Source of the DNA: Octopus sinensis
Taxonomy: Eukaryota
Direction of reading: 5' to 3'
NCBI RefSeq assembly: GCF_006345805.1
Contig: NC_043011.1
Span: 55,502,464 to 55,566,463, forward strand
Length of the DNA: 64,000 nt
Below, in pieces: positions 40,292-40,563 of the stretch; the first letter of the stretch is position 1; the number at the start of each line of letters is the position of its first letter. The notes under the pieces were generated by a model. The model saw only the letters and a list, made by a program, of their open reading frames with translations, was not told the DNA's origin and did no database searches. The position numbers and the translations under genes were made by a program.

Positions 40292-40399
40292 CTGTTGCAC
40301 AAGTATAATGGTAATAAAGCATTTTTTCCTTATCTTCATTGAGGTCCATGTAACAATTCATCATGTACTCTCGGGCAGCCATATAATCACACTTGGGCC
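40292..40399 (-). CDS. GNAQ: G-protein alpha-q, alternative penultimate exon B (108 nt, retinal-like type)
   Basis: tctgatttcag|GG CCC...ACA G|gtatgt. Translates GPKCDYMAAREYMMNCYMDLNEDKEKMLYYHYTCAT; same length and phase as exon A; 19/36 residues identical to it. Confidence 0.93.
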
Positions 40400-40455
40400 C
40401 TGAAATCAGATGAGTACAGATGATGTGTGAAATGAGGAATATTAACAAGACATAC

Positions 40456-40563
40456 CTGTTGCACATGTGAAATGACTATATATAATTTTATCAGGATCTG
40501 GGTTTAAATCAACAAACATTCGCAATATGAATTCTCTGGCAGCTTGTGCATCTTTCTTTGGAC
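40456..40563 (-). CDS. GNAQ: G-protein alpha-q, alternative penultimate exon A (108 nt, canonical type)
   Basis: tttgatttcag|GT CCA...ACA G|gtatgt. Translates [36 protein letters not shown] with the TCAT G5 box; phase 1/1. Not in the ORF track. Confidence 0.93.

What the first reader, a model, noticed from the sequence alone, without database searches (positions are those of the whole stretch)
40292..40563. Tandem mutually exclusive exons switch Gq between a canonical and a retinal-like receptor-contact surface
Seen: two intact 108-nt exons with the same phase and the same gatttcag acceptor and ACAG|gtatgt donor, but only 19/36 residues identical. Exon A matches human GNAQ at about 32/36 (from memory). 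Exon B resembles squid retinal Gq (from memory, PKCDYEAAREFMMDSYMDLNEDKEKMLYYHYTCAT). Known: this segment encodes alpha4, the alpha4-beta6 loop and beta6, which contact receptors, and Drosophila Gq has visual versus general splice forms. Inference: one octopus gene makes both a phototransduction Gq and a general Gq through this switch. I found no duplicate of exons 3-6 or of the last exon in the window. An annotation showing only one exon would miss an isoform.
Basis: partly seen in the sequence, partly recalled or inferred. Interest (0 to 1): 0.8.

Follow-up and report, generated by a model that had tools for sequence, protein, structure and literature searches.

The report
Octopus Gq alternative exon pair
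The two look-alike 108-base exons are real, mutually exclusive exons of the octopus Gq gene that produce a standard Gq and the "visual" Gq long known from squid retina, but public annotation already lists both isoforms and fly Gq has an eye-specific version of the same exon.

Summary
On the minus strand, exon A (40563-40456) and exon B (40399-40292) are each 108 nt. They share phase, GATTTCAG acceptor and CAG|GTATGT donor, and lie 56 nt apart. They match at 19/36 residues.

They sit in the Gq alpha gene. The 252 residues encoded in the window equal the C-terminus of Octopus sinensis XP_029645859.1 (isoform X1, exon A) and XP_036365673.1 (isoform X2, exon B). Exon A matches mammalian Gq at 32/36. 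Exon B matches Loligo forbesii Gq P38412 at 32/36, and a B-type Doryteuthis record is named "visual iGq-alpha".

Cuttlefish transcripts of the two types are identical over about 1.5 kb except inside this cassette and for one 3-nt indel, so one gene makes both.

Argonauta has the same A-then-B pair with a 61-nt intron. Scallop, oyster, Lingula and an annelid have one copy. Arthropods duplicate the same exon in the opposite order (divergent copy first), so the cephalopod pair probably arose independently.

Retina-specific use of exon B and the receptor-contact idea remain untested here. An effector (PLC) interface is an equally good reading.

RefSeq already annotates both isoforms, so novelty is low.

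The parts
58296..58450 (-). Gq alpha constitutive exon (155 nt; [10 protein letters not shown]...TDSAK-Y), first Gq exon inside the window; exons encoding the first ~101 residues lie beyond the window
   Evidence: tblastn and AG/GT boundaries; spliced product equals the C-terminal 252 aa of XP_029645859.1
54912..55040 (-). Gq constitutive exon (129 nt; YLDDIDRI...DSIIFR). This is the exon that is duplicated in arthropods and fishes, but it is single here
48437..48566 (-). Gq constitutive exon (130 nt; switch [14 protein letters not shown])
46485..46638 (-). Gq constitutive exon (154 nt) whose donor at 46485 joins either exon A or exon B
40456..40563 (-). Exon A: canonical 108-nt cassette ([36 protein letters not shown]), used in isoform X1
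   Evidence: 32/36 to mammalian Gq; identical peptide in Argonauta, squid and cuttlefish A-type records
40400..40455 (-). 56-nt intron between A and B. Every YTNAY branch-point candidate lies 14-50 nt from the exon A donor
   Evidence: 61 nt and well conserved in Argonauta
40292..40399 (-). Exon B: divergent 108-nt cassette (GPKCDYMAAREYMMNCYMDLNEDKEKMLYYHYTCAT), used in isoform X2; cephalopod 'visual Gq' type
   Evidence: 100% to XP_036365673.1; 32/36 to Loligo forbesii P38412
40224..40291 (-). Intronic stretch just downstream of exon B, conserved with Argonauta; candidate splicing-regulatory sequence (inference)
   Evidence: one blastn block, window 40592-40224, 87% identical to Argonauta, spans both exons and their flanks
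40564..40592 (-). Conserved 3' end of the intron upstream of exon A (polypyrimidine tract and acceptor)
31880..31962 (-). Last coding exon ([27 protein letters not shown] plus stop), joined to either A or B

Best explanation
The window carries the 3' two-thirds of the octopus Gq alpha gene (it matches Octopus sinensis) on the minus strand. Its second-to-last coding exon exists as a tandem pair, A then B, made by an old exon duplication. Each mRNA takes one copy. Exon A gives the canonical Gq (RefSeq isoform X1). Exon B gives the cephalopod-specific variant (isoform X2), which is the type in the squid Gq record named 'visual'. The cassette encodes helix alpha4, the alpha4-beta6 loop, strand beta6 and the TCAT guanine-binding motif. 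The isoforms therefore share the nucleotide pocket motifs, switch regions and C-terminal tail, and differ at 17 positions on and under one face of the Ras-like domain. Shown: the exon anatomy, both isoforms in public records, same-gene origin in cuttlefish, presence in octopods and decapods, and absence from four other lophotrochozoan genomes. Inferred: (1) Joining A to B is prevented because the 56-nt intron puts any branch point within 50 nt of the exon A donor (steric hindrance, as in alpha-tropomyosin exons 2/3). A frame check cannot do this job, since 108 nt is in frame. (2) Exon B is preferred in rhabdomeric photoreceptors. (3) Its substitutions tune coupling to rhodopsin and/or phospholipase C. 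The pair most likely arose within the cephalopod lineage, independently of the arthropod 7A/7B pair.
For: Anatomy and homology. Identity to XP_029645859.1 (X1) and XP_036365673.1 (X2). O. bimaculoides has X1/X2, and O. vulgaris has CAI9735767/CAI9735768. Squid cDNAs of both types: AKI33348 (A) and AKI33347 (B). B-type records: Loligo forbesii P38412, D. pealeii 'visual iGq-alpha' AAM77353 and Euprymna ACB05682. Same gene in Sepia esculenta: B-type contig L004 and A-type contig L015 are identical over about 1.5 kb, except for 41 mismatches all inside nt 984-1080 (the cassette is about nt 977-1084) and one 3-nt indel. The runs are identified as S. esculenta in papers found. Argonauta locus: A then B with a 61-nt intron, and a 369-nt block 87% identical to the window. 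Exon B is under constraint but evolves faster than A. Octopus versus Argonauta: A has 1/108 nt changed and no amino-acid change; B has 15/108 changed, with 5 codons changing the amino acid and 4 silent only. Single exon in scallop, oyster, Lingula and Dimorphilus. Arthropods carry the divergent copy first. B-type sequences form their own clade (support 100/98) and are less similar to the arthropod divergent exons (13-20/36) than to canonical exons (17-20/36). Helix-4 assignment of position 13 of the cassette.
Against: I have no tissue-resolved reads for octopus. The Octopus vulgaris cDNA record Q9NL92 is A-type, and I recall, unverified, that it came from retina. A-type and B-type contigs both came from S. 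esculenta whole-larva runs. A 389-aa Argonauta gene model joins A and B, so double inclusion is not formally excluded. Many invertebrates splice introns of about 55-60 nt, so the steric argument is only plausible. The role of the alpha4/beta6 face in receptor versus effector contact was not tested, because my structure model was too poor to use.
Confidence: 0.85

Rival explanations
1. The exon switch changes the effector or kinetic side of Gq (phospholipase C interface, GDP release near the TCAT motif, or membrane/solubility behaviour), not the receptor-contact surface.
For: In Drosophila the eye-specific exon 7A encodes the same segment. V303, which corresponds to position 13 of the cassette, lies on helix 4. 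The authors assign helices 3 and 4 to the PLC interface, and V303D abolishes the light response. Several A-to-B changes fall in beta6 next to TCAT (S to Y, F to Y, II to ML). The receptor-selectivity tail LNLKEYNLV is shared by both isoforms.
Against: From established G-alpha structural work (my own knowledge, not tested here), alpha4 and the alpha4-beta6 loop also contact receptor intracellular loops, so both roles may hold. No assay or reliable model was available here.
Confidence: 0.4
2. Exon B is a broadly used alternative isoform with no strong photoreceptor specificity. The 'visual' label only reflects where squid Gq was first cloned.
For: The octopus cDNA record Q9NL92 is A-type. Both types are assembled from S. 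esculenta whole-larva runs. Both D. pealeii types were deposited side by side as 'Gq-alpha'.
Against: The B-type D. pealeii record is named 'visual iGq-alpha' by its depositor, and I recall (my knowledge, not checked here) that P38412 was cloned from squid retina. The arthropod analogue of this exon is eye-specific. B has been kept intact in octopods and decapods.
Confidence: 0.25
3. The cephalopod A/B pair and the arthropod 7A/7B pair descend from one duplication in an early protostome, with loss in bivalves, brachiopods and annelids.
For: The same exon with the same boundaries is duplicated in both phyla. Cephalopod B and the divergent exons of three of the four arthropods compared (not Ixodes) share Tyr at cassette position 17 and Met at position 27, where canonical exons have Phe and Ile.
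Against: The order is reversed: canonical-divergent in Octopus and Argonauta, divergent-canonical in Tigriopus, Vespa, Procambarus and Ixodes. Arthropods also duplicate exon 4 and the last exon, and cephalopods do not. Four lophotrochozoan genomes have a single copy. There is no tree or identity affinity, although 36 columns resolve little.
Confidence: 0.15
4. Both exons are normally included together (a 389-aa protein as in the Argonauta model), or one of them is a dead pseudo-exon.
For: Argonauta hians GAB1607557 is modelled with A followed by B. Double inclusion stays in frame.
Against: All transcript-derived sequences seen carry exactly one cassette. A doubled helix4-beta6-TCAT segment would not fit the G-alpha fold (established knowledge). 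Both exons have intact splice sites and open frames and are conserved between octopus and Argonauta. Similar concatenated models are common annotation errors in arthropods and fishes.
Confidence: 0.03

Closest known systems
Drosophila G-alpha-q (Galphaq/dgq) alternative exons 4A/4B, 7A/7B, 8A/8B, with an eye-specific isoform
   Same: The same 36-codon exon (helix 4, alpha4-beta6 loop, beta6, TCAT) exists as a tandem pair, and one copy is used in the eye isoform. The arthropod-wide arrangement is seen directly in the Tigriopus locus and in concatenated models from Vespa, Procambarus and Ixodes.
   Different: In arthropods the divergent copy comes first and the canonical second, and exon 4 and the last exon are also duplicated. 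Octopus has canonical first, only this one pair, and a 56-nt rather than about 355-nt spacer. Sequence and phylogenetic distribution point to separate duplication events.
Squid visual Gq alpha (Loligo forbesii P38412; Doryteuthis pealeii 'visual iGq-alpha' AAM77353)
   Same: Octopus isoform X2 carries the same cassette type (32/36 to L. forbesii) in an otherwise near-identical protein.
   Different: The decapod 354-aa records carry an extra Glu at the exon 5/6 junction that octopus lacks. Four cassette residues differ.
Exon-4 mutually exclusive pairs in vertebrate GNAQ/GNA11 (coelacanth, gar, teleosts; Lokits et al. 2018, PMC5896119)
   Same: Local tandem exon duplication in the Gq family gives mutually exclusive isoforms that differ at protein-interaction surfaces. 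Shark and fish 402-aa models show it.
   Different: A different exon is involved (the switch I / beta2-beta3 region). That paper does not mention molluscs or cephalopods.
Steric-hindrance mutually exclusive exons (alpha-tropomyosin exons 2/3)
   Same: There are two adjacent alternative exons separated by an intron so short that the downstream branch point sits too close to the upstream donor. The basis is the intron anatomy plus established knowledge of the tropomyosin case.
   Different: This mechanism has not been demonstrated here, and the minimum spliceable intron length in cephalopods is unknown to me.

Membership tests
Gq/11 class G-protein alpha subunit | G-alpha domain with Gq-class sequence, including switch [14 protein letters not shown], the TCAT motif and the C-terminal tail LNLKEYNLV | tested here: met
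   The window-encoded 252 aa match PDB Gq chains at E = 1.5e-137. Full-length relatives carry PF00503. The sequence is identical to the RefSeq 'G(q) subunit alpha' of O. sinensis.
Mutually exclusive tandem-duplicated exons | Adjacent exons of equal length and phase with homologous sequence | tested here: met
   108 nt each, same phase, 56 nt apart, 19/36 aa identical, E = 6.6e-12.
Mutually exclusive tandem-duplicated exons | Mature transcripts carry exactly one of the two | tested here: met
   Sepia esculenta A-type and B-type contigs differ only in the cassette, apart from a 3-nt indel. Squid cDNAs of both types and octopus X1/X2 models exist. Octopus reads themselves were not available.
Mutually exclusive tandem-duplicated exons | Transcripts with both or neither exon are absent or rare | tested here: inconclusive
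   No transcript-derived sequence with both was seen among the cluster members read. One genome-based Argonauta model includes both, and no read-level data were available.
Steric-hindrance type of mutual exclusion | Branch point of the downstream exon too close to the donor of the upstream exon | tested here: inconclusive
   The intron is 56 nt (61 nt in Argonauta), and candidate branch sites lie 14-50 nt from the donor. No competing RNA structure was found (z = +0.32). The functional limit in cephalopods is not testable with these tools.
Arthropod Gq exon 7A/7B system (as an orthologous duplication) | Same duplication event: conserved order and sequence affinity of the divergent copies | tested here: not met
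   The order is reversed. Cephalopod B matches arthropod divergent exons at only 13-20/36, and they form separate clades. Scallop, oyster, Lingula and Dimorphilus have a single copy.
Arthropod Gq exon 7A/7B system (as a functional analogue) | Divergent copy used specifically in photoreceptors | not testable with these tools
   Only the provenance of records is available: a B-type D. pealeii record is labelled visual. The runs I could trace were whole larvae.

The most novel reading that the evidence does not exclude
Cephalopods and arthropods, the two protostome lineages with high-performance image-forming rhabdomeric eyes, independently duplicated the very same 36-codon helix-4/beta6 exon of Gq. 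Each then dedicated the fast-evolving copy to phototransduction. Scallops, oysters, brachiopods and annelids make do with the single canonical exon. That would be convergence at the level of a single exon and would mark this face of Gq as the part that must be re-tuned for a dense rhodopsin/PLC cascade.
Probability: 0.35. Interest if true: 0.6.

Novelty: already known. Interest (0 to 1): 0.3.

Why it matters
The finding itself is solid, ordinary gene anatomy. Both isoforms are already in RefSeq for two octopus species and in the O. vulgaris annotation. The squid cDNAs are in GenBank/UniProt: one carries the name 'visual iGq-alpha', and D. pealeii has records of both types.

Its value is mainly practical. 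Anyone expressing 'octopus Gq' for opsin or other receptor coupling assays should choose the isoform deliberately. Gene models that concatenate both cassettes (Argonauta, many arthropods, fishes) are wrong.

The one point of wider interest is evolutionary. The same exon seems to have been duplicated separately in cephalopods and arthropods. I found no paper in the searchable library that describes the cephalopod pair or this comparison.

Tried and rejected
1. Structure model. An AlphaFold2 model of a B-type Gq from a 24-sequence alignment had mean pLDDT 56.8, with the Ras-like domain below 50. It was unusable, so I made no structural mapping or fold search from it.

2. RNA structure. Folding window 40620-40240 (minus strand) gave z = +0.32 against shuffles, so nothing supports a docking/selector-type mechanism.

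3. Polypyrimidine tracts. Both acceptors have 28/40 pyrimidines upstream, so I dropped the idea that exon A is the stronger default exon.

4. Tissue of origin from public run numbers. The runs carrying full-length A-type or B-type contigs that I could trace were Sepia esculenta whole-larva experiments, and the other run numbers were not found in any paper. No full-length octopus transcript contigs were on record.

5. Literature. Searches for a description of cephalopod Gq splice variants found none. Kingston et al. 2015 (JEB), Alvarez et al. 1996 and Talluri et al. 1995 are not held.

6. Two database leads turned out irrelevant. P0139 (metagenome contig L003) and P0146 (L021-L024) are Gq-like genes of unidentified organisms with very short introns and a single cassette.

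7. Vespa and Apis loci were not on record, so I used Tigriopus instead.

8. Near-absence of silent change in exon A. Octopus and Argonauta differ at 1/108 nt in exon A, against about 4-5% in exons 4-6. This looked like possible RNA-level constraint, but with so few sites it is only marginal.

Full report
**Observation.**
Read on the minus strand, the window shows two 108-nt exons at the stated coordinates: A at 40563-40456 and B at 40399-40292.
- Both are preceded by GATTTCAG and followed by GTATGT after ...AACAG.
- Both start with two bases that complete a Gly codon begun by the last base of the upstream exon (46485). Both end with the G of the Asp codon completed at 31962.
- The peptides are [36 protein letters not shown] (A) and GPKCDYMAAREYMMNCYMDLNEDKEKMLYYHYTCAT (B). 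They are identical at 19/36 residues and 63/108 nt.
- Within the window each exon finds the other at E = 6.6e-12 and nothing else, so the resemblance is not chance and there is no third copy.
Exon A matches the mammalian Gq chain 7sq2_A at 32/36. The recalled squid segment is exactly that of Loligo forbesii P38412.

**Gene context.**
tblastn and splice-site inspection place five further Gq exons on the same strand: 58450-58296, 55040-54912, 48566-48437, 46638-46485 and 31962-31880.
- Their introns are 1.8 to 8.3 kb. The exons for the first ~101 residues are outside the window.
- Spliced with A or with B, the 252 encoded residues are exactly the C-terminal 252 residues of Octopus sinensis XP_029645859.1 (isoform X1) or XP_036365673.1 (isoform X2).
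- No other Gq exon is duplicated in the window. I tested this with octopus, arthropod and shark alternative-exon peptides.

**Are both exons used, and exclusively?**
- Public records already hold one isoform with each cassette for O. sinensis (X1, X2), O. bimaculoides (XP_052830406.1, XP_052830407.1) and O. vulgaris (CAI9735767, CAI9735768).
- Doryteuthis pealeii has both types as cDNA records (AKI33348 is A-type, AKI33347 is B-type).
- Loligo forbesii P38412, D. pealeii 'visual iGq-alpha' AAM77353 and Euprymna scolopes ACB05682 are all B-type.
- The cleanest test came from RNA-seq assemblies of the cuttlefish Sepia esculenta. The species was identified through papers that list the run numbers.
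- A B-type contig (L004) and A-type contigs (L006, L015) are identical across about 1.5 kb of UTRs and coding sequence. The exceptions are 41 mismatches all confined to nt 984-1080 (the cassette is about nt 977-1084) and one 3-nt indel elsewhere. That is the signature of one gene with a mutually exclusive cassette, not of two paralogues.
- No transcript-derived sequence with both cassettes was seen. The only A+B protein is a 389-aa genome-based model from Argonauta hians.
- Partial records show exon A or exon B followed by unspliced intron (P0126, P0127, P0003, P0145).

**Evolution.**
- The Argonauta hians locus has the same arrangement: A, a 61-nt intron, then B.
- A single 369-nt block (window 40592-40224) is 87% identical between the two octopods. 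It covers both exons, the short intron, about 29 nt upstream and about 68 nt downstream.
- Exon A differs at 1/108 nt and at no amino acid. Exon B differs at 15/108 nt, with five codons changing the amino acid and four silent only. Both copies are therefore maintained, and B evolves faster.
- The A peptide is identical in octopods and decapods. B-type peptides of octopods and decapods are 31-33/36 identical, so the pair predates the octopod-decapod split.
- The Gq loci of a scallop, an oyster, the brachiopod Lingula and the annelid Dimorphilus each contain a single canonical copy of this exon.
- Arthropods do have a tandem pair of the same exon. In the Tigriopus locus and in concatenated gene models from Vespa, Procambarus and Ixodes, the divergent copy comes first and the canonical second. 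Exon 4 and the last exon are duplicated as well.
- Cephalopod B exons form their own clade (support 100/98). They match arthropod divergent exons at only 13-20/36, which is less than either group matches the canonical exon.
- Reversed order, restricted distribution and lack of affinity together favour two independent duplications. Thirty-six columns cannot prove it. Nautilus and gastropods were not available.

**How it most likely works.**
- *Splicing.* Because 108 is a multiple of three, neither double inclusion nor double skipping shifts the frame, so frame-based surveillance cannot enforce exclusivity.
- The only distinctive feature is the very short A-B intron, 56 nt here and 61 nt in Argonauta, inside a gene whose other introns are kilobases long. 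Every branch-point-like motif in it lies 14-50 nt from the exon A donor. This fits the steric-hindrance mechanism known from alpha-tropomyosin exons 2/3 (established knowledge), but it is an inference.
- I found no unusual RNA structure (z = +0.32) and no difference in polypyrimidine content between the two acceptors. The conserved intronic flanks are candidate binding sites for tissue-specific factors.
- *Protein.* By the well-established G-alpha fold, the cassette covers helix alpha4, the alpha4-beta6 loop, strand beta6 and the TCAT motif. A fly study places cassette position 13 (V303) on helix 4.
- The 17 A-to-B changes include several Phe-to-Tyr and Ile/Leu/Val-to-Met replacements and a re-charged loop (NPDPDK to NEDKEK).
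- The switch regions and the receptor-selecting C-terminal tail are common to both isoforms.
The fly authors, however, assign this region to the phospholipase C interface, and a single change there abolishes the light response. I rate an effector or kinetic role as about as likely as a receptor role, and the two are not exclusive.

**Photoreceptor specificity.**
- *For it:* the depositor of a B-type D. pealeii record named it 'visual'. From my own knowledge, not checked here, P38412 was cloned from squid retina and the Euprymna B-type record came from a light-organ study. In flies the analogous exon 7A is the eye form.
- *Against or missing:* the Octopus vulgaris cDNA record Q9NL92 is A-type. 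I recall, without being able to check, that it came from retina. The expression data I could trace were whole larvae. This step remains inferred.

**Comparison with what is known, and novelty.**
- The kind of system, tandem exon duplication giving mutually exclusive Gq isoforms with one used in the eye, has been described for Drosophila since the 1990s, as cited in PMC5765363. A different exon shows the same pattern in vertebrate GNAQ/GNA11 (PMC5896119).
- The octopus instance is already in RefSeq as isoforms X1 and X2, and the squid cDNAs of both types are public.
- I found no paper in the searchable library that describes the cephalopod exon pair or compares it with the arthropod one. PMC5896119 does not mention molluscs. 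The apparently independent origin is the only part that may be new.

**Verdict.**
The mutually exclusive exon interpretation is supported. The functional reading is plausible but untested. Novelty is low.

Noticed in passing
L004 nt 817-819 versus L006/L015 (Sepia esculenta transcripts); proteins P0136, P0138, P0001, P0131-P0133: Decapod Gq transcripts come with or without one extra Glu codon at the exon 5/6 junction (SDNE-E-NRMEE). It occurs with both A-type and B-type cassettes, so it is a second, independent small splice variant. The octopus junction (48437 / 46638) has no sequence that could give it.
   Followed up: partly
Proteins P0123 (Argonauta), P0004-P0008, P0017-P0028, P0059-P0062 and others: Many public Gq gene models of 389, 396, 402 or 432 aa (Argonauta, insects, crustaceans, ticks, sharks, teleosts) concatenate mutually exclusive exon copies into one protein. 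They outscore true orthologues in HMMER because both copies score. These are annotation errors.
   Followed up: partly
window 40456-40563 versus L001 65630-65737: Exon A shows only 1 silent difference in 108 nt between Octopus and Argonauta. Neighbouring constitutive exons with identical protein differ at 4-10% of bases. This may reflect extra constraint at the RNA level, but the numbers are small.
   Followed up: partly
window 40292-40399 versus O. vulgaris CAI9735768 (P0124) and O. bimaculoides XP_052830407.1 (P0128): The B cassette differs between close octopus species (MMNCYMD here and in O. sinensis, MMDCYMN in O. vulgaris, CDYN in place of CDYM in O. bimaculoides), while the A cassette is invariant.
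   Followed up: no
window 40018-40170 and 40224-40291: Two intronic stretches downstream of exon B are conserved with Argonauta: the near one lies inside a block that is 87% identical overall, and the far one is about 69% identical. They are possible splicing-regulatory elements.
   Followed up: no
L017 12041-12082 (Mizuhopecten Gq locus): A 14-residue partial second copy of the end of exon 4 ([14 protein letters not shown]) lies about 45 nt downstream of the full exon. It may be a remnant, a start of duplication or an assembly artefact.
   Followed up: no
L016 2190-2498 (Tigriopus Gq locus): The copepod's two exon-4 copies are separated by only about 51 nt, a short spacer like the 56-nt one between octopus A and B. 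Its two exon-7 copies are about 355 nt apart.
   Followed up: no
window 15304-17261 (+): A cluster of three long open reading frames (253, 230 and 149 aa) downstream of the Gq gene has no Pfam match and no significant match among solved structures (best E = 0.23). Origin unknown, possibly a decayed mobile or viral element.
   Followed up: partly
window 9986-10366 (-), 13977-14601, 18204-18926: Repeats in the region downstream of the gene: a reverse-transcriptase fragment (RVT_1, below Pfam's cut-off), a 625-bp (TAT)n array and a 45/90-nt satellite of 8-16 copies.
   Followed up: no
L021-L024 (Logan contigs, protein P0146): An unidentified organism with about 40-75-nt introns has a Gq-like gene whose cassette ([29 protein letters not shown]) mixes canonical and B-like residues. 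It is a single copy, and I could not name the source organism.
   Followed up: partly
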